DNA from: Lytechinus pictus
Lineage: Eukaryota
Reading direction: 5' to 3'
Assembly: GCF_037042905.1 (NCBI RefSeq)
Contig: NC_087252.1
Coordinates: 11,904,001 to 11,968,000, forward strand
DNA length: 64,000 bases
The translations under genes were made by a program, and so were the position numbers. Under the pieces are notes generated by a model, which did no database searches, had not been told where the DNA came from, and saw only the letters and a program-made list of their open reading frames with translations. Every line of letters starts with the position of its first letter. Position 1 is the stretch's first letter. Shown one piece after another: positions 5,767 through 53,442 of the stretch.

Positions 5767-8700
5767 TTAATTGAAATTATATGTGAAAAGCAGCCCGGAG
5801 ATGAATCCTGGTTGCCAGGCAACGACGAGAGCTGAAGATGTCGTCTGGTTTTGATGGATGATGAGTGGAGAAGGTGAATCTGGTGTGGCTTTGAATATGC
5901 CGAGGAAAAACGAAAAACTTTATCATTATTTCAATACCTGTAAGGATCCTTTTGTTATTGTAGCTATTTTGTTTAGTTCTTTGTTTATGTTTCCGATCCT
6001 TTAACATGTAAAAATTGTGGCATATTACCGATTGCTGTTGTATGATGTTATCTTAGGTTACACGTAGCATATCATTCAGCTGTGAACATTTGTGCCATTG
6101 ATATTAGTCTTTGAAGTAGGCCCGATTATTTTTTAATACATACGCACGCGTAGCACATTCAAACTTACTGGGAGTGGAGGGGTTGAAGACCACGCTGCCT
6201 TCACCGTATCTTGATTTAGCAGTGCAGCGGTAAATACATGGATATTCAGGAACTGGGGTTTGAATTGCCAGTTTTGAAGAGCTCAGGGGTCCGCGTTCTG
6301 GTGAGGTGTCGGTGAGCGAGGTGCGACCGGTAACGTTTAAAATCAGAGTTTCGTTGCAGAGCCATTCGAAGGCAATGACGAGGGGATTTGCATCTGCTGT
6401 ACATATCAACAAGAATCCAGCAGTCCCGCTTGTTTCTTTCGTTGTAAGACGTCGAAGAGCAATAGACACAATGGGGTGATCTAGAATGAAAAAGGTATAC
6501 AAGAAAATTGGAAATGAAATAGACGTGAAATATGAGACAGGTTGACAAAAATTGGTTAAGATTGGTGGTAGATAATTTATTTCTTTTTAGAAAGGTTACT
6601 TGGCAAAGCACTTACTCATTGTCATTGTCCCATATTATTTATCCATTATTATATAGCAAAGGAGCATACCAATTTGTTGGCTCAGTTGGCAGCTGCCGGG
6701 ACCACGCTCAATTGGGCATAGTGAATTTTCAGAGGTTTTTCTTTTTCTGATATATGTTTTGAACAATTAAATACGATTTTTTTTTAATGTAAACAATAAT
6801 CTGACGGATTTCAACAGCATATTCATCATGCCGTAGTCTTTACCATTCTTATTCTGACATTGCACTTACACGATATGGTCAGGACCGTACTGTCATTCAC
6901 AAAACGAGGAAATGGTACTCCAGGTTGAACAGCCACACAGATAAGACACTTTCCATGATCGGATCTCTTGGGAGTGAAGAAAAGTGTACTTTCAGCATCA
7001 TAGATATCAGCTCTGGTTTTACTTATCCGCAGGGATGAGTTAGACGTCACATTGGTTGATCCTAGGTACCAGTGAACGAGGGGGGCCGGGTTCCCATTAA
7101 ACACTCTGCAGGTTACGTTGGTCTCTGCTCCTTCAAAGATACCGTCTTCTGGGAGAGCTATTCCGATCTCGTCTGGTGGTCCTTCAAAGAAACATAAAGC
7201 AGACGATTATCATAGTAAAATTGAAAGCTAAATATTAGATATAGCATCAAAGCATAGCCCGTCCAGTGTTATTTGCGCACCGTTGTAGTCTTAGATGACG
7301 TCAAATCACCAATAGTGAGGCGTCGAATCACCATGATCACCAATAATGACGATATGGATTCAATATAACTATGAATATTATAACGAATACAGTAGCAAGC
7401 TAGTTGTAATTATGTGTATTTTGTAGTAAAAATATATGGTTCATTCTATTCTGAGTAAGCATTATTATTTATCATTAACGTTCTACACACAGAAAAAATT
7501 GTTAATACAACGTTTAAGGAATAAAATCTCACCAAGAACAACAAGTCTAGCTACGCACGGCTTAATAAAGACGCCCTCTATAGATGGGTAGCATACAATG
7601 TGCATTCCATGGTTCTTTTTATCTGGATGTATAGTTATGGTACTTTCAGTGTCAAACAAAGTTCCGTCTAAAACACTGCGAGTCGTTGAAAGGTTTGCGT
7701 AAATTTGAGTATCGTCACCACCGCCATATAACCAGAATGACAGTTCAGTTGCCGGGAATGATCCAATACTTTTACATGTGATTGAAGTCGGTGAATTTTC
7801 ATGAACGTATAGGACGGTTGAATGGGACTGGTAACCTCCAGATTGAAAGAGCAGCACACTTGTAGGCAGAACTCCAAAAAGAAAATAAAAATAAAAAGAG
7901 AGATAAACAGGAAGGAATATGTAAATTAGTTATCCATGCACTAGCGAATGCCAAATCATTATAAACTTAAAATGCCTTTTCATTGGACATTATCATAATG
8001 CTTTACCCTAATTTTCACGTTAAAATGATATATAGAGATGATATACCTATTAACTTACTGATATTCCCTGAAAAATATAACAAAGAGAAAATCCATACCA
8101 TGAACAATGAGATGAACTGAGCATAGAAGTTTATTTTGTAGTCCTGGGTGTGACGCGATGCAGTTAAGAATCGTTTCGTGGTCTTCCCTGGAGGGTGTGA
8201 TAGTCACCGCTTTTCGGGAGATGTAAAATCCGCCTTGAAGAGCATCCGACTGATCCTGATGAACAACAGCCATATCATCTGGTAAACGCCATTTCAGTAG
8301 TGCAGGAGGCATTGCTCCATATACTTCACATGTGATGTTGTATTGATCTCCAGCTATGACAGTCACTGAAAGGTTATTGAAGCAGTAGCGGATCCCCGTG
8401 TCATCAATAATAACGATCACATTCGGTGGATCTGATGATAGAAGTAATGAATACACTCAATATTTTTATTTTAATGAATGCCTTTGTACTTTTCATATTA
8501 ATGATGTACCTCACTAGAATAAAACCTTTTAGTTATTTTTTTTTATAATAACATAGGCCTAACGTAGAACAATCACGTTCAACGTACTCAAAACATAATG
8601 GTTTACAAGGATTAAAAATGGTAGTGGTATTTGACATTTAGAGCTACTTGGATATTTTTTTCATTTTCATTTTAATGTTGAACCTAGTTAGAATAGAATC

Positions 8701-9783
8701 AGTTAAAAATCGATATAACGTACATGTAGACCTGACATAGGACCATATAATGTTTGACAAGCTCAAAACATAATGCCTTACAAGGGTTGAACATTTTACG
8801 TTTATGATATATGAGGTATATGAGCCACCCTACGACAGCGACTGTTAAGTTCGCAACCAAATGCCACTTGCGGTCATTTGGATACCTAGTGTAAAATATT
8901 GTCAGATTATATTTATTTTCGCTACACATATCTATTATGAACTACATGTATGGTTTTGATGTCAAATCGAATGTATATAGCTCCACATTTTTTTCCCCAA
9001 TATCTATTGCTCATGCCGCTATCCGTAATCATTTCTGGTGAGATTTTTTTACTTGTTAGACATTCCATGAAAACATCTGCTGATAAGCAGAAAGGCAAAA
9101 AAAATTATGTCAGACGTAGAATAAGAAAATACAATTGCATAAATCAGCTTTCAATACTTATTTTGCGACTAGCAATGTGAAGGCGACCAATTTGAAAGAA
9201 ATAAATACAAGTATTTTGTCCGCAATGGTAATGATGAGGGTTTTCCGTGTAGTTTATTTACATGAACTTTAATACAACAATAATTTTGGTTTTGTTGTTT
9301 GTTCTTACGAAAATAAAATACTATACTTCACTAGGATTCTCTTTCAGCAATATGCTAATATCAATAGGGGCAATATACATGTACATATAAAACATATACA
9401 AAATTGGTAAAAAAATATATATATATTTTTTTTGTAAACATACGTTAATGACATTGTCATGATAATCGTAAAGTGTCCGAGCCACAGTTTCCAAATTTTT
9501 GGAACTATATTATAATATTTACGGCGAAATTGTGATTTTATTCCTTAATTAGCATTATCAATCAGTTAAAGATAAATTTTGATAATTGGTAAAATTGAAA
9601 ATAAACAAGTTTAAATATAAACCATTCGAACGGCTCACATAATATATCACCCTTAAATATCCATCGTCTTAATTCGCTACGATAAACTTACTAGTATAAT
9701 GCAAATACAACTAAAGACTTACTGCTTGGTGAGATGATTACACACAGTGATAAAACAAGAATTGTTTGAATATAGATGGCCAT
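5767..9783 (-). CDS. Unit I: predicted secreted IgSF protein, SP-C2-C2-C2-I-FN3 stub, ~492 aa (nephrin-like Ig domains)
   Basis: complement(join(9723..9783 MAIYIQTILVLSLCVIISPS, 8099..8431, 7533..7871, 6870..7181, 6169..6480, 5767..5888 ...VVAWQPGFISGLLFTYNFN*)). All introns GT-AG, phase 1; frame open; Ig Cys pairs present. Confidence 0.85.
8782..9079 (-). pseudogene. Possible decayed V-set exon in intron 1 of unit I
   Basis: CAG acceptor at ~9080. Fragments GKNVEL, KYNL...ANLTV and a terminal FNP+T|GTAAAG mirror intact V exons (GENITL, KYSL...GNLTI, VLNP+G|GTAA). Contains stops and frameshifts. Confidence 0.4.
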
Positions 9784-10876
9784 CGTCGTCCAGATATTAC
9801 AAATATGGAAATACCATAAAGTCTTACTGAAGTCTTAGACATTTTACACGGTGGTCAATTATCATTGCAAGTAGATCATCAGTCCATGATCTAATAAGAA
9901 CTATACCGTTTTGAAAAGCTACATACATGTATGGCACTTTGTTGTATCATCTCCTACTTCGATACACGGATTCGGTTTCACATACTTCAAACATCCATCA
10001 CTATGACAGGTATAGGTCTAATGCAATCATGTTGATATTTTGTTTTATCTTTATTTTTTTTGTAAAGTGGGCGCTCTTCCTGCAGAAAATGTGATTAACC
10101 TAAAAGTGGAAATTTAGTATAAGCATATTGAAGCCTACTAATGTAATAACAAAATTCAGGTATAGTACAATTCAACCAATCTGTCTTGTTATTGAACTAA
10201 TGATTTTTTAATGTTCAAACAATGAATTAATACTGGTGGTTTAAGCAGTAATTTGGATAATGGGAATCAAAATTCATACCCCTCAGTTTATTCCACGCTA
10301 TGCCACATTTTTCAGTTTAAATTTTTTTCGCAAATACTGGAGAACTAGTTATTGGATCGCCCAACGTAACAAAAGAGGTCATCAATCAAAATAGGTATGG
10401 CGTTCCCCCATGATTTTCGGGGGGGGGGGGGGGTGGGAAGCAAACAATAATAGTAACAAATGTTTATTTTTTTATATGCAGCAAAAGTTTCGAATTTTAC
10501 CCTTTTCGCTTTCATTGAATTTCTTTACTTTCAATATTTTTTCATCTCCATTCAAAAAATCATTGTCAATTCATTTATTGATTAATTTACTCATTTTTCT
10601 GAGGAGGCAGCCCCGATATCTTTAGCTCTCTCACAAACACGCGCGCATACACGCGCGCACACAATATATAATCTGCACGTCAGGGCCGCTCGATTACATA
10701 GCGATATATCATTTATATAACATAATTACAGAATAGACATTAATTAAAAGTTGTGTTGAATATTAAATATGAAATAACTAATCCACCGAATGTATCTGAA
10801 AACATCGCATTTCCGAGTGTTTATACTGTATAAAGAAATGAAATGTGCGATGGGTTATCTTATCTACAATAAAATT

Positions 10877-13800
10877 CTACATTTTACCGATTTCATGTTT
10901 GTTGATCACATTGTCGATACTTTCTGATTGATACTTTTGTCCAATGATGAATCCTAGCTGCCAGGCAACGAAAAGAGATGAAGATCTCGTCTGGTGTTGG
11001 TAGATGATGAAGACAGAAGGTGGATTCGGGATAACATCTGTAAAAAAAAGATAACATAAACTGTAAATATAAATTTAAGAGGAAATGTTATGAGTATCAC
11101 TGAAATGTCAAAATTAATACTTTTATAATGTTCTGTGTTAAAGCATTATTGATAGGATTACGTGAATATATGGATAATTTTGAGACAATTTTTTAAACAA
11201 TATTTACCCATTTATATTTATTCAGTTCAAAATGAACATAGCAAATTCAATTATTTTACATTGTGGAGGATTCATTAAAAGCCACAGTCTTAAACAATTA
11301 TGATTCTTCCGGTGTAAAAAATATAAAGACAACATCAATTATGTAATAAAAGTTATACAATGTGTTTAGAAATATTTTGATGACATCACTTTATTTGTTA
11401 ATTATCAGACAAACAGAAAATAACCGTTAAACGTACACGAATAAAGGGAATCGAAGGTTGCACTTCCCGAGCCGTATTCTGATTCAGCGGTGCAGTTAAA
11501 AACACAATGATTTTTCGAGAGTTGGTTTTGAATCGCAAATACGCTGGACCTTAGTGTTGCATCTTCAGATATAGTCTGGGGGAGAGTAATGTTATTGGTG
11601 TCCCAGGGCACTACAGTCTCGTTGCAAAGCCAAACGAAGGTATTGACAGGAGGATTGGCGTCCGCTTCACATATCAACACGAGCTCAGTAGTCCCACTTG
11701 CTTTGTGTGAGGTAAGACGTCGAGCAGTGATTGACACAGCAGGATTATCTACATTACAGATACAAAATACAAATTTGCTATAAGTTAATATGAAATGGGA
11801 GAGGCATAAGGTCTGGCAGAGACAAATTATCAAATTTGTTTAGGAAGAAGCAAAGCAGGAAACAAAACATGCAATCATTTTGTAAAAATGTCATTTTGAA
11901 AATTTGTCTCATCGCGACCTTTATCATGTTTATAGTCTCTGAAGGTTAAAAGAAACTTAAAATGCTAAAGTTTTCTTGTACAATATTGTCAATCTTATGA
12001 ACAGACAAGCAAAACAAGAACAAAAAATAGCAACGAGTCAACTTGGTAAACGTGTAAACAGACCGGATCAGTTAGAAATCAAAAGGCTTCCCTTTCTATA
12101 AAACCAGCTTAGTAGTCTTATCAAAAGCATTGCAAGAAACGGTACTTACATGTTACGTTCAGAACCAAGCTTTGATTCACTGAACGTGTAGGTTGAACTG
12201 CCAGGCAGAGAAGACGTTTCCCATGGTCAAACCTCGTCGGTATTAGAGTCAGAGTGCTTTCAGTGTCATATCGACCGGCATTATTTTCACTTATTTTTAA
12301 AGATGAATCCTCTGTAAGATTTCTTGACCCGATGTACCAATGGATATGCGGTGCAGGGTATCCATTAAGAGATCTGCAGGTTACATTTATTTCTATGCCA
12401 TCGTATAGGTCCACAGTAGAGCTCATAATTACGCGTTCTGGTGGGCCTTTAGACGAAACATAAATCGATAAACATTTTTAAATGCCTTGAATATAGGATA
12501 TAAATTTCAGTTCAAAGTCAACCTGCTTAATGTATTATGTAATTTGTAAAAAGGGTTAAAAAACTCCTCTTGCAAACCTTCCCTTTTTTTTAGATTACGT
12601 GAAATTATCAATATTAGCGATGACGAATTGGCCCTTTTAGCAAGGAAAAATGTAAGAAATGTTAAACCACACAGAACTATTAAGAATATGTGTTATCATG
12701 TAAATCATGGCAGTTGGATCACGACTATTAAAGCAATGAATTGATTTTTTTTGTTTGAATAAACATGTCCTTTCAAAAATTAGTAACCGAAAGGGAAGAA
12801 GAAGAATACCTCACCGTAAACGATCACTGTGGCGGACGTAAATCCGACTACGTGTTTTTCAAGTGATGCGTAGCATTGAACGGTCTTCCCATGATGTTTA
12901 ATATTTGGATGTATTGTTACAGTGCTCTCGGTGTCAAACAAAGCATCGTCTAAAACATTCCTTTTGATTGAGGAATTTTCATGGATGGGGATTCTGTCAG
13001 TATGACCAGTACCACTTGTCAACTGAAATGATAGTTTGGTCGCTGGGAATGACCGAATACTTTTACAAGTAATTGAAGTCGGTGAATCTTCTTGAACGTT
13101 AAGTACGGTTGAATTGGACTGGTTTCCTCCAGTTCGAAAGAGCACCACATCCCTTGGCAGAACTTAAAATAAAAACAAAAGGAGACATTTTGAGTGAGTG
13201 AGAGAGATAGAGAGCTAAGGAGGGGGGGGGGGGTATTATGGATGGCATCGAATTTAAACTTTGGTAAATGATATTGAGGAGACTGAAGAGATATGTTTTA
13301 TGTTTTATTACATACATGATATATTTTTTTATGTATATTCTGTCGACATAAAAGTGAAATGATAGCGTAAATCCATCTGCGAAGGAATAACATCGCTTAC
13401 AAATTTTTAAAGGTAAAATATTACAGAGGCGGCAATAAAAGGCTCACTAAAGACTGATACTGACATTTTGAAACAGAAATGACCTGTATTGCATACATAC
13501 CATGAACATTGAGATGAACTGAGCGTAGACGTTCATTTTTTAGTTCTGGGTGTGACGTGATGCAGCTAAGAATCTTTCCGTGGTCATTCATGGAGGGTGT
13601 GATGGCTACCGCTTTTCGGGAGATGTAAGATCCGCCTTGAAGAGCTTCCGACTGATCCTGGTGAACAACAGCCATATCATCCGGTACATGCCATTCCAAC
13701 ACTGCATGGGGATTTGCTCCGTATGCTTCACATGTGATGTCATGCTGTTGACCAGCTATTACCGTTACAGAGAGGTTGTTAAAGGAATAACGGACCCCTG

Positions 13801-14223
13801 TTCCATCAATGATGTAGATCCAAGTGGGTGGAGCTAGCGATAAAAAAATAAGATGTTTTCAGCAGTAAAGTCAGTTGATAAATATATTTTTCTTTCAATT
13901 TCAAAATAATTTTACGTGTTATGATGTAAACTATGGAACATATTTGGAACATCAAGATATTCTCCCTTAATGTTATGATTTCGTTTAAATAGTGGATTCT
14001 CTCTCTAATTGCGTAGGCCCTACATATTTCGATTATCACTAATCGTTAATTGGTTCATACACAGTGTTCATGCCAATTCATACGATCAGTATCTATTTGC
14101 TATGCAAACCTTCTCATCATGCTTTGATGAATCAAATGCAACATATGACTACTTACCGCTTTGTGAGATGATAACCCCAAGGAAAAGTTGAAGAGCTACT
14201 TGTCTAGAAATGGACATTGTCAT
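10877..14223 (-). CDS. Unit H: predicted secreted IgSF protein, SP-C2-C2-C2-I-FN3 stub, ~505 aa
   Basis: complement(join(14157..14223 MTMSISRQVALQLFLGVIISQS, 13501..13833, 12815..13162, 12150..12446, 11437..11748, 10877..11037 ...FVAWQLGFIIG...KM*)). GT-AG, all phase 1, open frame. Confidence 0.85.
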
Positions 14224-14991: not shown

Positions 14992-17900
14992 TTACCACGC
15001 AACGAACAGAGATGAAGATCTTGTCTGGTTTTGGTACAGGGTGAACCCAGAAGGTGGATTCAGGATAAAATCTGTAAAAAATAGAAGATGATATAAACAG
15101 TAAACATAAATCTAACATGGTACGTTTATAAATATAAATGAAATAGTAAATCAATTGGTAGGATAGCATGAATATTTCATTTTCAAACAAAATTAATTTG
15201 TATTAATTTATTTATTCCTTTTTATTTATTTATTCAATTTAGGATAAAACATATCAAATTCAACTATTTACAGTGTGGAGGAGTCATTAAAAGCCACATG
15301 CATAAAAAAGATGATTCTTCTAGTATAAAAATATGAAAACATCAACTATGTAACAAAAAATGCATAGAGTGATTAAAAGTTTTTTGATGACGTTATTTTA
15401 ATTGTTATTTGATTATTAGAAAAGAAACAAAAGGTAAACGTACACGAATTCAGGGAATCGAAGTTTGCACTTCCCGACCCATATGCTGATACTGCGGTGC
15501 ATTTATAAACAGAATGGTATTTGGAGAGTGGGTTTTGAATCTCAAGTACGCTGGACCTTAGTGTTGCATCTTCATATATAGTCTCAAGGAGTGTGATGTT
15601 ATTGGTGTCATTGGACACTATAGTTTTGTTGCAAAGCCAAACGAAAGTAATGACAGGAGGATTTGCGTCCGCTTTACATATCAACACGAGCTCAGTAGTC
15701 CCATTTGCTTTGTTTGATGTAAGACGTCGAACAGTGATTGACAAAACGGGATGATCTACATTACAGATTCAAAATAAAAATTCGCTATAAGTTGATATAA
15801 AAAGGGAGAGGCATAATGATTAGCAGAGACAGTCGGTTTTGAAAAACTCGGAAGAGGAAACAAAACACTGTCCAACTATTTTGCTAAAATGAGGAAGCAG
15901 TGCCATTTTTTCTCATTGCAGCCTTCGTCATGTTTCTAGTCTGTGAATGTAAGAAAGAAATTTAAAAGGCTCAAGTTTTCTTTTAAAATTTTGTCACAAA
16001 ATCTAAAAAACAAGCGAGCAGGACAAGCAGAAAAAAAAATTGTAATAGCAAATGAGTCAACGAGGAAAACATGCAAACAAACAAGATGAGTTAGAATTAA
16101 AAAAGCTTTCCTATCTGTCCAACCTGCCCAATAGTCTTATCAACAGCATTACAAAAATCAGTACTTACATGTTATATTCAGAACCAAGCTTTGATTCACC
16201 GATCGAGCTGGGAGTGTTGTAGGTTGAACTGCCTCACAGAAAAGATGTTTTCCATGATCAAACCTCGTCGGTATTAGAGTCAGAGTGCTTTCAGCATCGT
16301 ATCGACCAGCTTTATTTTCACTTATGTTTAAAAATGAATCCTCTGTAAGATTTCTTGATCCGATGAACCAATGGATATGCGGTGCAGGGTATCCATTAAC
16401 AGATTTGCAGGTTGCATTTATTTCTATGCCCTCGTATAGGTCCACAGGGGAAATAATTTTGATCCCTTTTGGTAGGCCTTTGAACAAAACGTAAAAATAA
16501 TATTCATATAAAAATGCCCTAAGATGAATAATGAAATTTTGTTTTTAATATAACCTACTTAACATCCTAATGATTTATATAATTGATGAAAGAGATGAAA
16601 GACACCTCTTGCATTCTCTATTTTCTTAGAATATGTAAATTCCCTAATAAAGTGATGATGCCGTGGCCCTTTTCAGCCTTGGATTTTGTAAGAAATCCAA
16701 AACAATACACAACTATAGAGAATATACTTTATCATGTAAATGATGACGATTATTATCAAATAAAACTTAATAGGACAATAGATTGAACTACATTATTATT
16801 TATTTCTGGAAAAATACTAACCAAAAGGAATATTAAGACAAACTCACCGTAAACGATCAATTTGGCAAACCCTACGTCGAATCTGGATCCTTCAAGTATT
16901 GCGTAGCATTTAATGTACTTCTCATGATGCTCAATATTTGGGCGTATGGGTAAGGTGGCTTCGGTGTCAAACAAAGTATCGTCTAGAACACTTATTTTGC
17001 TTGAGGCATTTTCATGGATGAGGATATTGCCAGCATGACCAGCACTACCTGCTAACTGAAATGATAGTTTGGTAGCTGGGAATGACTCAATGCTTTTACA
17101 AGTGATATAAGTCGGTGAATCTTCTTGAACGTGTAGGAGTTTTGATTGTGAATGGTTACCTCCAGTTGGAAAGAGCAGTACGTCCCTTGGCAGAACTTCA
17201 AATTAAAAGAGAAAGAGACATATTGAGTGAGTAAAATGAGGAACTAAACTGACAGGGATGATTATGGATGGTACTGAATTAGCACTTTGATAAATGATAT
17301 TGAGGAGACTGAAAGCTTTTAGCACATACATGACATACTTTCCTGTATACGCATGTTATGTGGACAAGAAAGTAAAATGCACATATAATGTAAATCCATC
17401 TGCAAAGGAATAGATTCGCTCAGACATTTGGTTATTTTATACATTACAGTGGAGGCAATAAAAGGCTCTCAAAAGACTAAGAATGACATCTACAAACAAA
17501 AATAACCTCTATGACATACACACCGTAAACATTGAGATGAACTGAGCACCGAGGTTCATACTGTAGTTCTTGGTGTGATGCAGTGCAGCTAAGAATCTTT
17601 CCGTGGTCGTTCCTGGAGGGTGTGATTGTCACAGCTTTCCGAGAGATGTAAGATCCGTCTTCAATAACATCAAACTGATCATGTAAATATATCTCTGTAT
17701 CACCAGGTATTTGCCATGTAAGTACTGCAGGGGGCCTTGCACCATGTGCTTCACATGTGATCTCATTTTTCTTCCCAGCAGTTAAAGAAAGGTTGTTAGA
17801 ACAATAGTGTAGGATTCCCTTTCCATCCGTGATTGAAATTATGCTGGGTGGAGCTGGTGATATAATGAAATAATCAGTGTAAATAGTCAATCACGTTTTT

Positions 17901-18188
17901 GTCAGTTCATGTCATACATAATAATCTATTCGAAATGGAATTTATTATGAAGTTTTGAAAGTCTCTGAAAAAATTATGATGTCACTTGAATTATTATTTT
18001 TTTTATCTTTCAACAAATTAAAGATTTCGATGGGTAATAATCATAGGTCCGTATACGACAGATCGCCAGTATCTATTTACTACAAACTACTCTTAATGAA
18101 AGAAATTACACAACGCTTCATACTTACAGCTTTTTGAGATGGTAATAACGAATAGAACAAGAGGTACTTGCACAGAAATGGACGCCAT
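14992..18188 (-). CDS. Unit G: predicted secreted IgSF protein, SP-C2-C2-C2-I-FN3 stub, ~479 aa
   Basis: complement(join(18128..18188 MASISVQVPLVLFVITISKS, 17524..17853, 16848..17195, 16169..16477, 15444..15755, 14992..15071 ...LFVAW*)). GT-AG, phase 1, open frame; closest paralog of H, including introns. Confidence 0.85.
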
Positions 18189-19104
18189 CTTTCAGTGATC
18201 GTAGGCAATGCGACAACGATCTCTTTGTTTCAGCCGACATAGATTCCAACACAAACTATCAGAACACAAAATACAAGAGTTGAAATGCTTTAGACATTTA
18301 ACAATGGCACTTCCTTGTTTTTCCTCCTTACAGGGATTTAGTTTCGCATACACCAATCAACATTTCAGGTAGAATGCTAAAAGCTTGTAAGACGGATAGC
18401 GGGCGCCCTTTCGTCAGAAAGGTTGGTATGGTTATCCTTTCGTGAGGTTGTCAGAATAATAGGTCCAGAATAAATTACCACGCATGAATGTAGGGATTAA
18501 TAAAAAGTATCTTATTATTAAAAAAATAAATAGATAAAAGAAGAACAGAAGATGTAGATTGTCTGTGTGTAAACTTACTTTCCAACAAAGAATAAAACAT
18601 GGAAGAATTATATTTTCGTATTTAAACAAATCACTGACGTACCGAAAACTACGGAAAAGTGATAATGTTTAAAAGTAGACATTTTGAATGTGTGATGAAC
18701 ACTAGATTTTGCCAATTTATTGCAATTTCATTGTTTTTTACCTTGAGAGGTGGTTAGCAAGAAAAGTTGAACAGAAATAACCTGCACGCTAATAGCCACA
18801 TAACATCCTCAAAAAATCAGTTTCAGCCACCGACAGAGTATATACGAGGAAAACAGTCGCAAGTCGTTAATATACATTATGATTTTCACCTTACAAATAC
18901 ATATTGATATTCACATATAATGTAGTTATTACATACTGCAAATACTAATGGAATTGATTTACCAAAATGCAATTGAAGCTGCAACGAAGTTTGATATGCA
19001 CAAATTCACACATTAAACATTAAATACGTTTATTCGACTTTTTGGAAACTTCATCTGGTTCAATGCATCCTTTAAAGTCATTTCCGATGCAGTATGAACA
19101 ATAT

Positions 19105-19943
19105 TTAACATGACTTCATGACATAACCTGGTTGCCAGGCAACGACAATAGATGAAGATTTTGTCTGGTTTTGGTCAACGATGAGCCAGGCAGGTACATC
19201 TGGGATAACTACATGTATATAAAAGGCGGAAACAAAAACCATCAAATGATAGAGTAAGAGTTTAATAGTACAATTCTTATTTTCTTTAACCATAATTCAT
19301 TGTCTTGTTTTTATATTTACTATTTTAATCAAATGTGACGAAATATCATTCAGATGTGACAGTCTGTATTTTTAAACTAACGTATATAGTTATTATAATA
19401 ATTCAATTAGTATTACTTTAGAAAACAGAATATCCAAAATCAAAAATAATATCACAGTTCAACTCACGAAATAACGAAGAATTGAAAACTGCTGATCCTA
19501 ACCCGTATCTGGATACAGCAGTGCAATTGTAAATAGATGGATGTTCAGATGGTCGGCTTCGAATCATCAGGTCACTAGTGGTTACGGTCTCTCTTTCTGC
19601 ATGTTCTGGGCTATTCTCGTGGAGATTCATGTTACTGGTGTCATTGAAGACAATAGCTTCATCACTGAACCATTCAAAGACAACGGCAGGTGGATTGGAA
19701 TCTGCTCTACATGTCAGCGCAAATTCCATAGCCCCATATGTTGTATTTGACTTACGTGAAGTAAGACGTCGAGCAGAAATAGAAACAACTGGTACGTCTG
19801 GAAGCAAATGCGGAAACCTTATAAATCAGCGAGAGCACTAAGTGATAAAAACGAAGGTTTACAACAGAAAGAACAGGAAACGGAATTTAAAAAGGGAATG
19901 ATAGTGTACCCAACATCTCTACTACAGGTATCACTTTATTTTC

Positions 19944-19978
<35 letters not shown>

Positions 19979-22900
19979 TAAAAAATAATTCAGAAGTCTG
20001 TGTGGGGATTTGGTTAATTTGTTAGGGACCATTGGTCCTAACTTGTACCAAAATATGAAATGAGTTAGTGCTTACATGATATGTTCAGAACAATACTCTC
20101 GTTCAATGCCATGATTGAGAATGTTGTAGTTTGGACTGCCTCACAAATGAGCCGCTTCCCATGGTCAAGCCAATTCGGTATTACTATCAGAGAGCTTTCA
20201 GCATCGTATCGGTCAGCAGCATTGACTGTATTCTTAAGAGATGAGTCTTCTGTGACGTTCTTTAAGCCAATGTACCAATGGATGAGGAAATTGGGGTATC
20301 CATTTCGAGCCCTGCAGGTTACGGTTGTTTCTATTCCATCTTCCAAGTTAGCATCTCCAATGGAAGCAATTTCTACACTGTCAGGTGGACCTTTACGATG
20401 GATATGGTAAATAAATCCAAATGCGAAAATATACCTTAAGAAACAGAATTGCCCTTGGGTTAAAAGTGTTGTTCAATATTCCTAAAACACAATATTACCC
20501 CCACAAATCTAACTAGAATGCCTTTTTCGTAAAAGAACATTAAGCAGCCTTCTACCCGTTCTAGTAAAAATATATTTGGAGATCTATTTGGATCATCTGA
20601 TAATCAAATTTGGTATAGCAAATACATGACAGAAGTATAATAGAATAACACATTTACCTATCAAACGTGATATATTTATATTAGCCTGTACATGTAGTTT
20701 CACCTTAAACATTTCGAAAAGTTCGGAAAATATGTATTGTCTAAATAAAAAACTTAGTATTAATCGACGATGTTTTATAACATAAACCACATGTGAAATA
20801 TTTTTTTGGTGGTATTTAGTGTATTATGCTTTTAATTTCAGAAGAAGGCACAGATGTCACAGAATTATAATGGAATATGTTATGTATACATAGGGATAAA
20901 ACAACTCACCGTAAACCAATAATTTGGCAATCCTTCGTTTAACATGGCTTCCCAAACTCGCAAAACATTTAAGGAATTTTCCATGGTGCTTTCTCTCTGG
21001 AAGAATCGTGATGACACTTTCGGTATCGAACAAACTGTAGTCTAACGCACTGTTAAGCTTCTGAAGACTAGTATTATTTTGAAGACTGGTGGAACTACCA
21101 AGCATCCAAACAAATTCAACCGCTGGGAATGATCCAATGCATTTGCAGGTTATTGATGAGGGTGAATCCTCTTGAACGTACATGACTGCTGATCCCAAAT
21201 CTTTGTCCTTGCCAATTCCTTTTTGGAAGAGGGTCATGCTCGACGGTAAAACTTTATAAATCGAAAGAAAAGGAAAAAGAATAACCAGACGTTAATCTTG
21301 TGACAATAATTGTTACATGATTTAGATTTTTTTTTCTCCTATTAACATAAATTGAAATTAACTTGAATAAAAATAAAGGTGATACATTTCTGCAATATTG
21401 GCTTAACATAATTATGAATTTATTTTTTACATATATATATATTGTTTTTAAGATAGACAGCCTGAATAAAGAATAAAAGCAAGTCCCTAGACTCGACTCT
21501 TGAGATGGACTGAACGGCACGGAATGACCTATTAGCATTATAATTATTATACTGCGCAAGGTTGATCTATAGTCTACACATACCATGAACATTCAGGTAC
21601 ACTGAACTTTGTAAGTTGGTGAATAGTTTGGGATGTGATGCCTCACAGCGCAGAACCTTTCCTTGGTCGTTCGTAGAGGGCGTGATGGTAGCTGTTTTCC
21701 TTGACACGTACTTGTTCCCTTGAATTGTATCAGACTGGCCGTGGACATAAAAGATCACATCATCTGGTATTAGCCAAGTCAGTACGACAGGAGGCCTTGC
21801 TGGGAAAGTATTGCATGTAATGTTATACGGTTCTCCAGAAGTTACTGTTATAGTTGCGGAGTTCGAAATCGGACCGTCTGGTTGTGCACTATCGATAGAG
21901 ACCTGCGATGGCGGAGCTGCGAATGTAGAAGAGGGAATTTATGAAATAATTATAAAGACAGTATGGAAAAGTTCCTGCTTGCTCAGATATTTCATTCTTT
22001 TAGGACTAATTTTCAATTTACATACCATTTTTCATCCAAGTAACCTCAAATATAGACGGGAAAAAATCAACCATCAAATACATAGCTCTTTTAATATATA
22101 GGTTTCAAAATACACTGGAAAATGGGGTATCAATAATCCGATAATTACATTTTTTGGCGGGGAAGGGGGTCCATTGTCGTACAAGATGAGCAACTTTTAA
22201 GAAATTTAAATGACGGACATGTTTTACCCTTGGTATTTGACGCATTCACTAAGGCAATGCACTCGGGCTTGGCCTTAGAGGAGTCGTCATTGGTCTAGGT
22301 AGCGGACATGCAAACTATGTCCTTGGTCCGACCTTGTTCTTGGCCTTTGGTTACCTGGCATTACCCAAATCACTGATAATGAAATGTAGGATGACGATGA
22401 TGGCTAATTTTATACATTCCTTTATCAAATGGATCTCATCATTTAGTAAATTAGACGTCTAATAATAATGGAACATAATCATCCTCGGTGTAGCAGCTGT
22501 TACAGTTTGTTTTGATTCATACGAACTTTTTTTCTTGTCTGGGTCAAAATGGAATGTAATTTTACAAAGCTAAAGACTGAAATATTGAAAAAAAAAAAAG
22601 GCATTAAAATAAAGTATACGCTCTTGAAATCACGGTGTCGGGCCTTTATCTTTAAACAAAGTTGAACAGTCTTTCATTGACGTTGTCTTTTACATCTGAT
22701 TTTGTTTTACCAAACAGCGTAGGGCAATTTGAATGGTATGTTGCAACGCTGTCCGTTTTTTCTTCTTTTTTTACCTGGATTTAGTACTTGTATTGTCTCA
22801 ACCGCTGACCATGTTCCACTCTTGTTTATTAAATCGCATGTGTATCTCCCATTGTCACCAGTGGTCAAATTGATTATTGTTAGCGATGTGCTGCGGTCAT

Positions 22901-23492
22901 CTACCAATATCTTGTACTTTGTAGGATTAGAAATATTAGGTGTACATTCATTCGCATATGGGCACGATTCATTAGCGACCTCGATGCCGTCGTGTTTCCA
23001 CTGTACTAAGCGAGGATATGAAGAAGGTGAATAACTGCATTCAGTTGTAAAATCTTCTCCGGTGACTGGTAGGGTCTGTTGTTGAAAAGAAATCGTATTT
23101 GCAGATGGGGATCCTGTAAGTTCAATATGAAAAACAAAGTCATTTTGTGATAATATGTAAACATCACATTTCAAGGATGAAATTTTGATAATCTCTCATC
23201 AAATTTCAATCAGGTATTTAGAGGAAAGCCAGTTAATACATTGGTTCTAGAACTATTAATTGTAATAACGTGTCGAATATTATTTTGCAAGAATTGGATG
23301 AACATAAGTAAATTTAAGGGGGGAAAATAAACCATTCAGTGAAATTTTCGAGCTTTGTATTATCTGTTCGTGTAAATTTGTCTTCGACGTTCTTGACATA
23401 AAAAAGACGTTGTGAAACTTTATGAAATGCATAAACTACATACCTTTTCTGCACAAGAGAATGACAAAGCAGAACTGCAAATAAGATGCCAT
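19105..23492 (-). CDS. Unit F: predicted secreted IgSF protein, SP-V-C2-C2-C2-I-FN3 stub, ~603 aa (most complete unit)
   Basis: complement(join(23444..23492 MASYLQFCFVILLCRK, 22775..23113 V with DNGRYTC, 21584..21916, 20910..21251, 20076..20390, 19468..19797, 19105..19208 ...VVAWQPGYVMKSC*)). GT-AG, phase 1, open frame. Confidence 0.88.
19131..19143. promoter_or_regulatory. RFX/X-box-like palindrome GTTGCCAGGCAAC in the FN3 stub
   Basis: Perfect copies at 5811, 19131 and 37703; variants at 10957 and 14991. Confidence 0.45.
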
Positions 23493-28500: not shown

Positions 28501-29937
28501 AATAAACCTACTGCTCAAAAGGGATGTATAATCAGCGATAAACATAAAGTCATATCTTCATTTACCTCTTATAACTCGCAGAGAGGAAGCAGGGCCATTG
28601 TATGATATGACATTTATGTCATGTGCATCACAATATTTTCTGTTGTTACTTTGTCAGAATGGTATACACACAAACGAAAATAAATGGAACTGTTTTTTTT
28701 TTATTCCATAAAGAAAATACAAGCATTATTTGCTGTCTGACAATTGACTGTAGTTATAATTGTTAATGTTAAGATGATGCATGCATTTCACGTTGTATTT
28801 TATGTACTTTCGTTTGTCTTATCCCAATCAAATTTAATTGAATGTCGCCCATATCTGTCCAGCCTTCCTTATTACTTACCTGGGCTTAGTACTTCCAACT
28901 GTTCATACGCCGACCTTAATCCACTTTTGTTTAGAAAAGCGCATGTGTATCTCCCATTGTCACCAGTGGTCAAATTGATTATTGTAAGGGATGTGCTGCG
29001 GTCATCTCCCAATAACTTGTACTTTGTAGGATTAGAATTATTAGGTGTACATTCACTCGCAGTTGTGCACGATTCAGACGCAATTGGTGTTTCTTCGTGT
29101 TTCCACTTGACAGTGCGAAGATGCGAAGGAGGTGAATAGGTGCACTTCATCGTAAAATCTTGTCCTATGACGGGTAGGGACTGCCTTGGTTGAAAAGATA
29201 TCGTGGCGATAGACATGGTAGCGGGGGAGCCTGCAAATGAATTGGGTGGGAATATTGTCAGTTAGTGGTAATGATATACGTATTTCTAATTCATATCACT
29301 TCTCAAGAAGGGCATCCATTTTAGACTATCATGAGGTGCAAAGTTGCACCCTTCATGATATCTAACCCAAACGGGTGCAAAAATTGCACTCTTTCGAGTT
29401 TTGCTGCAGATAGATTTAATCATTTATTTTAGGCTTTTATACATAGCAACCAATCCGATTAATAATGAACAGTTTAGAAACTGGTATACGATTGGGCACT
29501 TTTCATTAAATCATATATATATTATTATATTGATCATATGTGTGTTCATCGCAATTTTTGTTTTTGCACCCTTTGTGAACCTGATAAACATATAACGGAT
29601 TTAATGCGTCATCCATACATGCCTAAGCCCATAAAGCGCACACTGAGACGAATTTAGACACCGCAATTAAGAATGAAAGAAAGCATTTTTATGATGAGAT
29701 AACTACTTACAGACATTTTTAATGTAGTGGGCAATAACCTTCCTTCATATTATCTTACAGTGTAACGGATGAAGTCTACGTGTAATATAGACTGTTGTCT
29801 TCATACATGTGGCCTGCTTACTAAAAAGGGAATTGGTGCGAGCCGGTATATAGATTCAGTGTTATCATTGATAGTAAATTCGACTTACCTTCACCGATGA
29901 ATAAAATACCAAGTAAGCACCAAATAGAGCACGCCAT
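25537..29937 (-). CDS. Unit E: IgSF SP-V-C2-C2-C2, no I or FN3 exon found; ~469 aa if the last donor is read through
   Basis: complement(join(29889..29937 MACSIWCLLGILFIGE, 28880..29230, 27629..27961, 26897..27238, 25578..25871)). Last donor is weak (GTCAGA); read-through stops at 25537-25539. Confidence 0.8.
26002..26756. mobile_element. PIF/Harbinger-type MITE in unit E intron 4
   Basis: Perfect 14-bp TIR AGCCCCAGTCACAT / ATGTGACTGGGGCT; TAA target duplication at 25999-26001 and 26757-26759; many internal CACGG motifs. Confidence 0.88.
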
Positions 29938-36500: not shown

Positions 36501-37169
36501 AAATTATTTTCAGTCGTGTTTCAAACTCTACATGCAATAATATGCAAGACTCAAAGCGCTTTATAACGATCCCACCTTCGACACCATTGTCGTGATAATT
36601 TATTCTAAATATTTCGATGGTTTGGGGAATATTACGTTGTTCTATTTCTTTGCTTTCTTTTGATCTATATATACGGATAGACCTATTATTTCTTTTAAAC
36701 TAATTTGCATTTTCAAGAAATCGGAAAATCAAATTAATTAAGAATATGTTGCACAATATTTACCTGGTGGCAGTACGTTCAGTTCAATTAAACTTGAAAA
36801 TGTATCAACATACGTGGCAACGAAGCAACGATATATGCCGCTATCATCTACCCCTAAACGACGTATTGTCAGGTTTCCACTTGAAGAATCAGACATTAGA
36901 CTGTACTTGGACTCATCTGAAATGTCTTTCTCGTGTGTAGGTTCTATTCCTTCACCTTTATCGCTGGTTGTGATCAGCCTATTGTTATCCACGTGCAGCC
37001 AATACAACGTTCGATGTCTGGATGGAGGTGTGAAGGCGCAAACAAGGGTTATATTCTCGCCAATAACCTGGATAATATCTGAGTTCTGCAGAAAGGTAGA
37101 CACATTCACGCCATATGCTTTAGAAACTGTGAAGATGATGAATACCATTATATGAACGGACAAATTCAT
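33514..37169 (-). CDS. Unit D: IgSF [SP+V]-C2-C2-C2-half I domain, ~521 aa, predicted secreted
   Basis: complement(join(36764..37169 leader and V in one exon with DSGIYRC, 36060..36386, 34852..35190, 34169..34477, 33514..33698 YPPVIVDYSIRR...ILTCRSDSRP...ITW...RMHC*)). GT-AG, phase 1. Confidence 0.85.
35780..35980 (+). mobile_element. tRNA-derived SINE
   Basis: Pol III A box TGGCTGAGTGG (35790-35800), B box GGTTCAATCC (35836-35845), non-tRNA body (GTCCATGAGCAAGGCATTTAATCTAC) and an A-rich end. Confidence 0.8.
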
Positions 37170-37331
37170 TCTGCTTCCCGTATATCGAGTCCAGATGTTT
37201 TATTACTGAATGTATCTAAACAATATACCACCTTCTGAGCTATCCCAAGACTTGAAATGAGCAGGAAGAGGTGTTTGCTTTCGATGAACTATAGACTGTC
37301 AAGCTATGGATTGACCCTTTTCAGTCACAGT

Positions 37332-37676: not shown

Positions 37677-40546
37677 TTAGTTATTAACCGGTTTTAATAC
37701 ATGTTGCCAGGCAACGAAGAGGGTTGAAGTTTTAGTCTGATTTCGGTCTACAAAGGGCCAAGAAGTTTGATTTGGGGTGGCTGAAATTTCAGGTAAAATG
37801 GGGAGGATTGTATAGTCACTGTGACAAGTTACAAAAACATAGAGGTAAAAAAAAAAATATTGGGACCAAAGCCAAATACAAATTGTTTTCGAGGGATGTC
37901 GAAATAGAGAAAAATACCTGTCAAAATCTGAATAAAGTAGAAATGAGAGTTGCACATTTTTGCTAATTTTTATGACATTCCATTTCACTATTCATTACTA
38001 AAGCAGTAGTTATTGATACTTACATGAAATGTTTAAAATTACGCTTGCATTTACTGAGGGTACCAAAGGTGCTGTAGTTTGAACTGCCTGGCAAAGAAGA
38101 CGTTTCCCATGGTCAAACCTACTTGGTATGAGGATCAGAGTGCTTTCAGCATCATATCGATGAGCGCTGTTGATGGATGTCCTCAGGGTTGATTTGCCTG
38201 TGACGTTTCTTGATCCGATGAACCAATGGATGACAGGAACAGGGTATACATTGAAAGCTATGCAGGTTATGTTGGTGTGTATACCGTCTTTGAGATCCTC
38301 TGGGATCATCATTTTAACATCTTCCAGTGGACCTTTAGGAAAACAAAGGAAATAGTGAAATACAAGATAGCCAATATTTGACGTAAAAATAAATTTGGTT
38401 ACCGACGAGCATAACCTTAACAGGTAATGTTAATAATAATGAGAATACAAAACGTACAAACCCTTTAACTCAAATGAAATGCCAACATGACTAGTGAAAT
38501 TCCCAGCACAAGGTGCTAACATGCCATTAGTTTTGACGATATTGACATGGGGTTATTTGATATGCATATTGAATAAACCCAAACAGGGTTTATTTATTAT
38601 AAAGAATGCATTCCCAATGCAGGTGCGGAAATCTATCCCAAAAGGTGGGGGAGTAAAATTTGACCAAAAAAAAAAGTTCATCATCCCAAAAGTTGGGTCA
38701 TCTCGTCCTAAAATACATGTTTTATTTCGATTTTGAATGATGAATTTTTACCATCATAAAAGACCAGAAATAGTAGGGGGACATTTGATATTGTGTCCCC
38801 CCTACTATTTTGAGTAGAGAGGCACGTCCTCCATGTCCCTCATTGGATTTCCGCCCATGTCCCAATGCAAGAACATATTTGCCTTGATATCAAATAGATC
38901 AGGAGTTCTCAAACTACGGCCCGCGGAGCTTCTTTATCCGGCCCGCTAGACTATGCTGTTTTTTTAATCACTTTTACATGTAAGTCCCAATATGAAATAT
39001 AGCTCAATATTACATGTATTAAATTGTATATCCATGAAACCGTAATAAAAGTAATGGCAGTCAAATTAATTTGATTTTAAGAAAAAAGTTTAGTGGGGTC
39101 TTTTCTGTCTGTTCTACTTTCTTATTAGATGACCAGCGCGGCGCTACATTGAAAAAGGGTAGTTTCACGTCAATTGTTGATAACACGTTGCATTTAAAAC
39201 ACGCACGTGCGCACACATTCCAACACGCGATCAATTTGGTTAAAGGTATTGTTTAACTTTGTGAGCAGCCGATTTAAAAAAATTATCAAACCAAGATGAA
39301 ACATGTGTACAAGTGCATGTATTAGAACTAATAAACCCTGAAAACAACCATTATTGAGAATGAAAAGCTAAAACTACAAGGCAAACCCCGATTTTGTAAA
39401 TAGGCGTCTTATAGACGCCTAAATAGTATACATAAGTGTATGGGATGAAATTAAGATGGTGTTTCCGGTCACTTTATATTTCAATTTTTGAAGCACTAAA
39501 TAATGATTTTCGAACGCAATTTTTTCTGGGCTTCATTTTTGAAACATATGACAGACACAGGTGACAAGTGTGACCTTCTAGCTCAGATTTTTAAAAAGTC
39601 AAACCAATGTTAACCAATCACTTTAAAACGTAAACTTCATCGCCGGTTCAGTTCTGCGGATTTTCACCGGGGTACATTAGTCATCATTAATTGTTAGCCA
39701 GGTCAAAATGGCATCAAATTCTGCAAAGGAAAGAAAGGTGGATGCTGAAAATTGTGTTTTCCATGAAGAATGGACAGACAAGTATCCATTCATTTTGCCG
39801 CAATCGAACACAGGCCATTGTGTTGGCCAATTTACTTTGACTACAAAACATATTGATAGACCTACTACAAAACATTATCTGTCTATTCAATTCTAGGTAT
39901 GTGTTAAAATTGGCATAGGTACATTTCTTTAAACAAAGTACTTAAATTTTGTTGTCATTACCATTGACTCTCGTTGTATTTTAAATCTTTTTTAAAATTT
40001 TGCTTGTGTTCCATATGAAACTGTTATGAATTTGTTTGATTAAATTCTCCCAATGTAAGGGCCAGATGGCACCACACAGCATCTAAGTATCCACTTCACC
40101 CTGGCCCTTTCAGGTTTATTTCGAGTCTCATATGGCTCTTCAAAGAAAAATGTTTGAAAACCCCTGAAATAAATGATCCAAGATACATCGTAACTCACCG
40201 TACACCATCAATCTGGCTACCGCTTGATCAACAAACTTGCCATCAATATATACGTTGCATTGAATGTACTTTCCATGGTCCTTCTTCCCTGGTAATATTG
40301 TGATGGAAGTTTTAGTGTCAACCAAATTATCATGTGAAACGACACTACGAGTCTTTGTGATTTTAAGAATGATAATGTTACCATTATAAAGATACCATTG
40401 TAATTCAGTCGCTGGGAATGTTCCAATTGCTTTACACGTGACTGAAGTAGGTGAATCTTCTTCGACGTTTATGCTTCTTGACCGAGTCCCATGAACCTCG
40501 TAGCCTTCATCGTGATGAATAAAGAGCATCATACTAGATGGTAGAA
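37677..40546 (-). CDS. Unit C: orphan 3' IgSF exons C2b-C2c-FN3 stub; no intact leader, V, C2a or I exon found
   Basis: complement(join(40199..40546, 38024..38332, 37677..37780 ...LFVAWQHVLKPVNN*)). Frames open, AG/GT sites intact, phase 1. Confidence 0.65.
38900..39810 (+). mobile_element. hAT (Charlie/SPIN-like) transposon 5' remnant
   Basis: Terminus CAGGAGTTCTCAAACTACGGCCCGCGG with repeated GGCCCGC; ORF at 39708 (MASNSAKERKVDAENCVFHEEWTDKYPF) resembles the N-terminus of Charlie/GTF2IRD2-type transposases; truncated. Confidence 0.75.
39244..39622. mobile_element. TTAA-target MITE (Kolobok-like) nested in the hAT remnant
   Basis: TTAA at 39240-39243 and 39623-39626; imperfect TIR AGGTATTGTTTAACTTTG / CAATGTTAACCAATCACT. 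Confidence 0.7.

Positions 40547-53395: not shown

Positions 53396-53442
<47 letters not shown>

What the first reader, a model, noticed from the sequence alone, without database searches (positions are those of the whole stretch)
5767..37780. Five FN3 exons all collapse at the same point, each by a different lesion
Seen: the stubs at 5767-5888, 10877-11037, 14992-15071, 19105-19208 and 37677-37780 are well conserved through QT.SS.L.VAW, then end differently: WQPGFISG..*, WQLGFIIG..*, W*, WQPGYVMKSC*, WQHVL..*. G and H are alike even in their introns, yet lose similarity within a few tens of nt after this point. Inference: the first ~80-100 nt (acceptor plus strands A-B) are under selection while the rest of the domain was released, or this position is a recurrent rearrangement breakpoint.
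Basis: partly seen in the sequence, partly recalled or inferred. Interest (0 to 1): 0.75.

Follow-up and report, generated by a model that had tools for sequence, protein, structure and literature searches.

The report
Inherited truncated FN3 end-exon, urchin Ig genes
The five "broken" FN3 pieces are the spliced last coding exons of neighbouring sea-urchin genes for secreted four-Ig proteins; they were copied along with an old truncation, so this is a fairly ordinary expanded gene family rather than five separate accidents.

Summary
On the minus strand, five short exons (5767-5888, 10877-11037, 14992-15071, 19105-19208, 37677-37780) encode FN3 strands A-B up to ..VAW and then end differently.

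The window is Lytechinus pictus chromosome DNA. It holds a tandem row of separate nephrin/Kirre-like genes, each with a signal-peptide or V exon, 3-4 Ig exons and a stub.

- **The stubs are real exons.** Spliced RNA-type contigs use the stub acceptor. RefSeq proteins of L. pictus, L. variegatus and S. purpuratus end in such stubs. dN/dS is 0.33-0.46.
- **Where FN3 homology ends.** It stops 4-12 nt after the W codon in all 16 copies tested, and no remnant of the rest was found in the window or in 0.4-1.5 kb beyond the other copies.
- **The lesions are not independent.** Each window stub has a partner elsewhere on the chromosome with the same sequence after the break (four in a duplicated array ~140 kb away, E's ~64 kb the other way). 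Several tails and stops recur in L. variegatus.
- **The sudden loss of similarity between two neighbouring units.** It fits a ~700-nt indel in the intergenic spacer.

One old truncation for units A-D, spread by duplication, is most likely. A second event for unit E is not excluded. This scan met the same family before on neighbouring DNA (s1-319997, s1-320060, s1-329270).

The parts
5767..5888 (-). Stub A: last coding exon of unit A (FN3 strands A-B, 15-codon tail, TAA stop at 5767-5769)
   Evidence: The post-break 122 nt are 85% identical to copy A2 (L024) in the second array. An AATAAA lies at 5593-5598.
10877..11037 (-). Stub B: last exon of unit B. The acceptor is at 11037. The open tail runs to the stop at 10877-10879. 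A GT donor follows 10888 and is used only in a conjoined RefSeq model.
   Evidence: RNA-type contigs join 11441>11037 and 12150>11037. RefSeq P0120 maps at 100% to the four Ig exons of unit B (its stub-exon hit spans a splice junction, 92%) and splices 10889/10888 to unit A Ig1 at 8432. Post-break W+20..257 is shared with L010, L009, L003 and L002.
14992..15071 (-). Stub C: the W codon is followed at once by TAA. A GT (AGG|GTAT) lies at W+21.
   Evidence: The whole 1.5 kb after the break is collinear with L004 and L008 at 68%.
19105..19208 (-). Stub D: last exon of the V+4-Ig unit D. The tail is QPGYVMKSC*. AATAAA lies at 19029-19034.
   Evidence: The post-break sequence and the AATAAA are shared with L011.
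37677..37780 (-). Stub E: follows Ig3 directly, with no Ig4. Homology to FN3 ends at W+4.
   Evidence: It is collinear with L026 from -912 to +1516 at 75%. L. variegatus protein P0156 ends in the same type of stub.
11438..13834 (-). Unit B body: Ig1 13502-13834, Ig2 12813-13163, Ig3 12151-12447, Ig4 11438-11746
   Evidence: RefSeq L. pictus P0120 matches at 100%. Pfam C2-set_2/Ig_3 hits. GT..AG joints in contigs.
14158..14223 (-). Signal-peptide first coding exon of unit B, inside the spacer after stub C
   Evidence: It matches P0120 residues 1-22 exactly. It sits in a 350-390 nt block conserved between spacers.
18128..18188 (-). Signal-peptide exon of unit C, inside the spacer after stub D. 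The upstream reading frame ends ..AYDH* 3 nt before this ATG.
   Evidence: L. variegatus isoform P0116 ends ..AYDH after splicing out of a stub.
9724..9783 (-). Probable signal-peptide exon of unit A (MAIYIQTILVLSLCVIISPS); end approximate
   Evidence: It lies in the block 9698-10012, which is homologous to the other spacers' promoter/signal-exon blocks.
6182..8429 (-). Unit A body (Ig1-Ig4)
   Evidence: tblastn map
15445..17854 (-). Unit C body (Ig1-Ig4)
   Evidence: tblastn map. Joint 15755>16169 in contigs.
19478..23120 (-). Unit D body (V exon 22746-23120, then Ig1-Ig4)
38025..40547 (-). Unit E body (Ig2, Ig3)

Best explanation
The stubs are the terminal coding exons of separate, tandemly duplicated Lytechinus pictus genes. 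These genes encode secreted proteins related to nephrin/Kirre-type receptors. Each has a signal peptide or V domain, three or four C2-type Ig domains, and a short tail.

An ancestor with a complete single-exon FN3, stalk, membrane anchor and cytoplasmic tail lost everything beyond FN3 strand B. The truncated gene was then multiplied by tandem duplication (units A-D) and by duplication of the whole block (a second array about 140 kb away).

The retained 25-27 codons are kept by purifying selection because they are coding. What follows is a short unconstrained tail, the 3' UTR and intergenic spacer, so each lineage reaches a different first stop.

Shown: exon status, splicing, own first exons, constraint, and inheritance of each break.
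Inferred: a single origin for A-D, secretion, and the way the 3' part was lost.
For:
- **Splicing.** Contigs of run X1 carry GT..AG joints Ig1>Ig2>Ig3>Ig4>stub, using the acceptor at 11037.
- **Separate genes.** Each spacer holds the next unit's signal-peptide exon 0.8-1.2 kb after the stub.
- **Annotated proteins.** Proteins ending in a stub are annotated in L. pictus (P0122, P0130), L. variegatus (P0118, P0119, P0121, P0128, P0156) and S. purpuratus (P0162).
- **Constraint.** dN/dS is 0.33-0.46, the same as for this segment in intact genes (0.47). Fisher p=0.001.
- **The intact form.** It is one exon and passes Pfam fn3.
- **Where homology ends.** W+4..12 in all 16 stubs, with no relic beyond.
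- **Array map.** Two arrays have the same order F-D-C-..-B-A, each followed by a gene with a full FN3.
- **Inherited breaks.** Partner copies share their post-break sequence: A~A2, B~L010/L009/L002, C~L004/L008, D~L011, E~L026.
- **The B/C boundary.** The C-type spacer from W+39-55 onward lines up with the B-type spacer from W+680-780 onward.
- **Structure.** The AlphaFold2 model has four confident Ig domains, and the stub residues score pLDDT below 50.
Against: - On an Ig2+Ig3 tree the stub-bearing units are not one clade. E groups with the intact gene L015, and S. purpuratus P0162 groups with intact-FN3 proteins. The AU test gives p=0.025 for Lytechinus rows only and 1.8e-66 with P0162, but the groups were chosen after seeing the tree.
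- Similarity between types A, B, C and D in the first 45 nt after the break is visible by eye but not significant against shuffles.
- Stub C stops immediately after W and has no AATAAA or ATTAAA in 1.3 kb, so that copy may be decaying.
- The RNA evidence comes from one small run that is 90-99% alike, not from this individual. No 3' ends were seen.
Confidence: 0.7

Rival explanations
1. Recurrent truncation. The FN3 exon was cut two or more times independently within about 25 nt after strand B. One event would be for A-D, another for E, and perhaps another in S. purpuratus. The cause could be a fragile sequence at this spot. Alternatively the spot may mark a functional exon boundary, such as an internal alternative 5' splice site.
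For: - The body tree places E beside intact L015 and P0162 beside intact proteins.
- E's homology ends at W+4 and its post-break sequence differs from A-D.
- E-type introns still align partly with L015, yet nothing aligns after W+4, so the rest is physically gone.
- A UniParc model (P0172) joins WQPGYD directly to the exon that normally follows FN3. That corresponds to a phase-1 GT at W+16 in intact exons.
- A 5-bp inverted repeat, CCTGG-CAA-CCAGG, sits at the break.
Against: - Unequal crossing-over in a tandem array can move one old stub onto other gene bodies and would give the same tree.
- The AU tests were post hoc, and the one restricted to Lytechinus rows is only marginal (p=0.025).
- The intron next to the E stub matches neither L015 nor A-D.
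- P0172 is a model of unknown species and evidence.
- The GT at W+16 is absent from several intact copies.
- The P0162 locus could not be read.
Confidence: 0.2
2. Variable-cassette locus of the clustered-protocadherin or sDscam type. Each promoter-bearing Ig cassette would splice from a donor in or just after the stub to downstream constant exons, or to the next cassette, so the stub would be an internal linker exon.
For: - Each unit has its own first exon, and a receptor gene with full FN3 follows each array.
- RefSeq conjoined models splice out of a stub tail: P0120 from stub B into unit A Ig1, in frame; L. variegatus P0001 and P0116 from a GSTLG| donor into the next unit's first exon.
- One X1 contig leaves a stub after the TG of the W codon.
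Against: - In-frame stops lie 0-27 codons after W in every copy, before most candidate donors.
- The donors differ in position and phase between units.
- The P0116 tail stops 3 nt before the next unit's ATG, as expected of read-through.
- No model or contig joins a stub to an FN3 C-half or a TM exon.
- No internal acceptor or C-half exists in the window.
- An earlier follow-up of the sister array reached the same negative verdict (s1-319997).
Confidence: 0.05
3. Dead relics. The units would be pseudogenes, and the stub conservation would come only from recent copying or from gene conversion by intact FN3 exons.
For: - Stub C stops at W+0 and L026 likewise.
- Each stub type is closer to the intact consensus than to other stub types, which conversion could produce.
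Against: - All four Ig exons of units A-D are open and were found at full length.
- Transcripts are spliced.
- dN/dS is well below 1, with synonymous divergence about 0.34-0.45.
- Stub-ended proteins occur in two genera.
Confidence: 0.05

Closest known systems
Nephrin / Kirre (IRRE-like, SYG-1/SYG-2) Ig-superfamily adhesion receptors
   Same: A chain of CD80-like C2-set Ig domains, followed in intact paralogs by one FN3 domain, a stalk, a membrane anchor and a tail. RefSeq names these genes nephrin-like, syg-2-like and kin of IRRE-like.
   Different: The stub genes keep only FN3 strands A-B, have no membrane anchor or cytoplasmic tail, and so should be secreted. They are tandemly amplified, with at least 16 stub copies in this genome.
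Truncated paralogs made by partial gene duplication or 3' deletion (soluble relatives of membrane receptors)
   Same: A gene copy ends inside an exon. The new 3' end reads into unrelated sequence to the first stop. The copy is then amplified in tandem.
   Different: The one-third FN3 remnant has stayed under purifying selection and is present in at least two urchin genera. The event that made it was not reconstructed here.
Clustered protocadherin / sDscam variable-cassette loci
   Same: A row of promoter-bearing Ig cassettes lies upstream of a receptor gene with FN3-TM exons.
   Different: Each cassette has its own stop. Three of the five window stubs have a canonical AATAAA 70-300 nt beyond the stop, and C has none. 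No splice to shared constant exons was seen. The only inter-unit splices are read-through types.

Membership tests
Fibronectin type III domain (Pfam PF00041) | A complete seven-strand domain of about 85-100 residues that the family profile recognises | tested here: not met
   The stub ORFs give no fn3 hit. They hold only strands A-B, about 25-27 codons. The intact paralog P0150 scores 28.7 bits against a cut-off of 25.
Fibronectin type III domain (Pfam PF00041) | Descent from an FN3 exon (homology of the retained part) | tested here: met
   The nhmmer profile of nine intact FN3 exons matches all 16 stubs at E 1e-15 to 1e-22, over model positions about 3-94.
Fibronectin type III domain (Pfam PF00041) | Folds as a beta-sandwich | tested here: not met
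   In the AlphaFold2 model of P0122, residues 460-488 (the stub) have pLDDT below 50, while Ig1-Ig3 score 80-92.
Nephrin/Kirre-type IgSF receptors | Chain of C2-set Ig domains | tested here: met
   PF08205 C2-set_2 scores up to 54 bits per exon and 85-124 bits per protein.
Nephrin/Kirre-type IgSF receptors | Single-pass membrane anchor and cytoplasmic tail | tested here: not met
   Stub proteins end 0-27 residues after W. Intact relatives carry the anchor, for example P0172 and P0176.
Variable-cassette locus (clustered protocadherin / sDscam type) | Each cassette has its own promoter or first exon | tested here: met
   Signal-peptide exons at 9724-9783, 14158-14223 and 18128-18188.
Variable-cassette locus (clustered protocadherin / sDscam type) | The cassette's last exon is spliced to shared constant exons | tested here: not met
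   There are in-frame stops in every stub tail. No such joint appears in contigs or in RefSeq models. The RNA sampling is thin.
Tandem/segmental duplicate family with an inherited truncation | The same junction and flanking sequence in paralogous copies | tested here: met
   Within types, A~A2, B~L010/L009/L002, C~L004/L008, D~L011 and E~L026 are collinear across and beyond the break.
Tandem/segmental duplicate family with an inherited truncation | One junction common to all types (A, B/C, D, E) | tested here: inconclusive
   B and C spacers are collinear apart from a ~700-nt indel. The first 45 nt are not significantly alike between types. The body tree is not monophyletic.

The most novel reading that the evidence does not exclude
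The same few bases after FN3 strand B were hit independently in several gene lineages: A-D, E, and a S. purpuratus gene. This would happen because the FN3 exon of this family carries an internal boundary there, an alternative phase-1 5' splice site around W+16 and/or a small palindrome. The strand A-B piece would then be a separable, selected C-terminal module of secreted Ig proteins rather than a leftover.
Probability: 0.18. Interest if true: 0.55.

Novelty: new member of a known kind. Interest (0 to 1): 0.3.

Why it matters
The finding shows how a membrane adhesion-receptor family in sea urchins produced a large set of secreted four-Ig proteins. The route was loss of the 3' half of the gene followed by tandem and block duplication.

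It also warns annotators about three things:
- The 'broken FN3' is a real terminal exon.
- Several RefSeq models in this cluster fuse neighbouring genes.
- The different stops are not independent hits.

The open point is why one third of an FN3 domain stays under selection.

Tried and rejected
- **Split FN3 domain.** I looked for an intron after W with the rest of the domain downstream. The intact paralogs encode FN3 in one exon, and there is no C-half anywhere in the window.
- **Decayed remnant after the break.** nhmmer with a profile of the missing part found nothing. A by-eye match of stub B's tail to strand C was not significant.
- **Deletion signature for E.** A blastn hit between L026 W+32..137 and L015 W+1190..1293 vanished once low-complexity filtering was on.
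- **Transposon as the post-break sequence of B.** The 876-nt spacer piece has only one other copy in the genome, beside L010.
- **GPI-anchor signal.** The tails differ too much in length and hydrophobicity between types to support one. This was judged from the sequences only, not with a predictor.
- **Loci of other species.** The locus of S. purpuratus P0162 or L. variegatus P0001 is not on record.
- **Fixed-window identity profile across the break.** It was spoilt by indel offsets. The blastn coverage tables were used instead.
- **Literature.** One search found no paper on this cluster.
Full report
**What is there.**
The window has no N and is 35.6% G+C. Everything relevant lies on the minus strand. 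Stop-to-stop frames and Pfam show a row of exons for CD80-like C2-set Ig domains and some V-set exons.

A self-comparison and a tblastn map give these tandem units:
- A (8429-5767), B (13834-10877) and C (17854-14992): four Ig exons plus a stub.
- D (23120-19105): a V exon, four Ig exons and a stub.
- E (40547-37677): Ig2 and Ig3, then the stub directly.
- F (29216-25540): V plus three Ig exons, no stub.
- G (37199-33517).

Each begins after an AG acceptor with a pyrimidine tract, in phase 1, and ends at the first in-frame stop.

**Species and annotation.**
RefSeq protein P0120 (Lytechinus pictus LOC135155004) maps at 100% to the four Ig exons of unit B (its stub-exon hit spans a splice junction, 92%). 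The contig length of 42,376,555 equals that recorded for L. pictus proteins. So the window is L. pictus, C8:11,904,001-11,968,000. Sources name the family nephrin-like, synaptogenesis protein syg-2-like or kin of IRRE-like.

**The intact form.**
A six-frame search of the genome with stub B found 41 matches, most in a 0.6-Mb stretch of the same chromosome. About ten carry a complete FN3 in one exon of roughly 100 codons, in phase 1-1. One of them, in protein P0150, passes the Pfam fn3 threshold. There is therefore no intron after the W in the ancestral exon.

A DNA profile of nine intact exons matches all 16 stubs tested at E 1e-15 to 1e-22. The match ends 4 nt (E, L026) to about 12 nt after the W codon. 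A profile of the missing part finds nothing in the next 400 nt of any stub. tblastn finds no C-terminal half in the whole window.

**The stubs are real exons of separate genes.**
- **RNA evidence.** The only public run that held part of the region (X1, recorded kind uncertain) gave contigs 90-99% alike with joints bounded by CT..AC, which is GT..AG on the minus strand. The joints run Ig1>Ig2>Ig3>Ig4, then Ig4>stub (11441>11037) and Ig3>stub (12150>11037). So the acceptor is used in a close relative or allele.
- **Own first exons.** Each spacer after a stub holds the next unit's first coding exon with a signal peptide. Unit B's is at 14223-14158 and matches P0120 residues 1-22 exactly. Unit C's is at 18188-18128. 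Unit A's is probably at 9783-9724. All lie inside a 350-390-nt block conserved between spacers.
- **Annotated proteins.** Proteins of about 450-500 residues ending in a stub are annotated in L. pictus (P0122, P0130), L. variegatus (P0118, P0119, P0121, P0128, P0156) and S. purpuratus (P0162).
- **Structure.** An AlphaFold2 model of P0122 has a signal helix and four confident Ig domains. The stub scores pLDDT below 50.
- **PolyA signals.** AATAAA lies 70 nt after the stop of D and is shared with its partner L011. It lies about 170 nt after the stop of A and about 300 nt after that of B. None follows C within 1.3 kb.

**Constraint.**
Over the 25 codons ending at W, dN/dS is 0.46 among all stubs and 0.33 among the B/C types. 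The same segment of intact genes gives 0.47. Pooled over five separate pairs, 22 of 89 synonymous sites differ against 29 of 286 nonsynonymous sites (Fisher p=0.001). The NQT sequon and the ..L.VAW stretch are the most constant part.

**Are the five endings independent lesions? No.**
A 244-kb map shows a second array at C8:12.05-12.10 Mb. It has the same order, F-D-C-..-B-A, and is also followed by a V..FN3-complete gene.

Each window stub has a partner that shares the sequence after the break:

| Window stub | Partner(s) | Shared post-break sequence |
|---|---|---|
| A | A2 (L024) | 85% over 122 nt |
| B | L010, L009, L003, L002 | W+20..257 |
| C | L004, L008 | collinear for 1.5 kb at 68% |
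| D | L011 | 62-70% |
| E | L026 (outside that array, ~64 kb before the window's start) | -912..+1516 at 75% |

Tails and stops also recur in L. variegatus proteins. Examples are KQEFIIGK* and GSPLGYEKIAPFAILCR*. So each break predates the block duplication. The shared tails also suggest that some breaks predate the split between the two Lytechinus species.

**Why B and C part company so sharply.**
The bodies of all B- and C-type units are 71-77% identical over the full 1.4 kb upstream, introns included. In the better preserved copies, the C-type spacer from W+39-55 onward lines up with the B-type spacer from W+680-780 onward, at 64-70% over 700-800 nt. The extra piece is not a dispersed repeat.

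**One event or several?**
For A-D a single old truncation is the economical reading. They share the array, the exon plan and the break zone. They also share a visible ATCATY-GG after W+12 in place of the intact GATGGT-GG. However, similarity between types in the first 45 nt is not significant against shuffles.

An Ig2+Ig3 tree does not make the stub-bearing units one clade. E joins the intact gene L015, and S. purpuratus P0162 joins intact-FN3 proteins. The AU test gives p=0.025 for Lytechinus rows alone and 1.8e-66 with P0162, but the groups were chosen after seeing the tree.

E-type introns still align in part with L015 (63-75%), yet nothing aligns after W+4. In E the remainder of the exon is therefore physically gone, not merely decayed. 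For A-D this cannot be told, because their introns no longer align with any intact gene.

Unequal crossing-over in such arrays could move one stub onto other bodies. The intron next to the E stub matches neither candidate source. A second event for E therefore stays open.

**Leads on why this spot.**
- A UniParc model of unknown species (P0172) joins WQPGYD directly to the exon that normally follows FN3. This equals a phase-1 GT at W+16 of intact exons. That GT is missing from several intact copies.
- The W-Q-P-G codons form a 5-bp inverted repeat.

Neither lead was tested further.

**Inter-unit splicing.**
RefSeq P0120 leaves stub B at a donor after 10888 and enters unit A Ig1 in frame. L. 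variegatus P0001 and P0116 leave a C-type stub at ..GSTLG| and end in the next unit's first exon. There the frame stops 3 nt before that unit's ATG. These look like read-through models of tandem genes, not a cassette system. No model or contig joins a stub to FN3 or TM exons.

**Earlier notes of this scan.**
A follow-up of the sister array (s1-319997) judged it a row of separate secreted four-Ig genes beside one receptor. Two first-reader notes (s1-320060, s1-329270) describe the same stubs on neighbouring DNA. My map of that array agrees.

**Verdict.**
The 'five different lesions' are divergence after an inherited truncation. The family is an ordinary, if large, expansion. The selected one-third FN3 tail and a possible second truncation remain as modest open points.

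Noticed in passing
window 14999 (stub C); L031 (C3:72539637) and L032 (C6:10247450): One X1 contig reads a stub up to the TG of the W codon and then continues with the exact start of an exon found on two other chromosomes. That exon is preceded there by a good acceptor and opens a THAP9/P-element-transposase-like reading frame. This looks like a chimeric splice from a cryptic donor, TG|GYAA.
   Followed up: partly
window 8058-14223: RefSeq L. pictus model LOC135155004 (P0120) fuses units B and A. It runs from stub B to A's Ig1 and then reads through A's first intron. This is probably a conjoined or mis-merged model.
   Followed up: partly
window 25540-29216: Unit F (V, Ig1-Ig3) has no Ig4 and no stub. 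RefSeq P0141 ('kin of IRRE-like protein 3') ends by read-through after Ig3. A like unit heads the second array.
   Followed up: partly
window 33517-37199: Gene G has a signal peptide fused to a V exon, Ig1-Ig3 and half an Ig4 exon, but no 3' end was found in 29.3-33.5 kb. Its S. purpuratus relative P0162 goes from that half exon straight into a stub.
   Followed up: no
L012, L013, L015, L016, L019 (intact FN3 exons): The first 82 nt of the FN3 exons of distant paralogs are 90-98% identical, while their Ig exons are only 27-64% identical at the protein level. This suggests very strong constraint or gene conversion on the FN3 exon.
   Followed up: no
window about 1870-3750: A tandemly repeated stretch with many offset self-matches at 62-65% lies downstream of unit A.
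   Followed up: no
window 44960-48081 and 51295-54582: Two further, shorter related units (V, Ig1 and an Ig4-half-like exon) lie on the minus strand. They were not analysed.
   Followed up: no
G000:C16:22361211-22361348 (L006): A C-type stub sits on another chromosome. It is 93-95% identical upstream to L004 and L008 over the ~45% of the flank that aligns, with an intact FN3 exon 14 kb away (L016). This suggests a recent transfer of part of the cluster.
   Followed up: no
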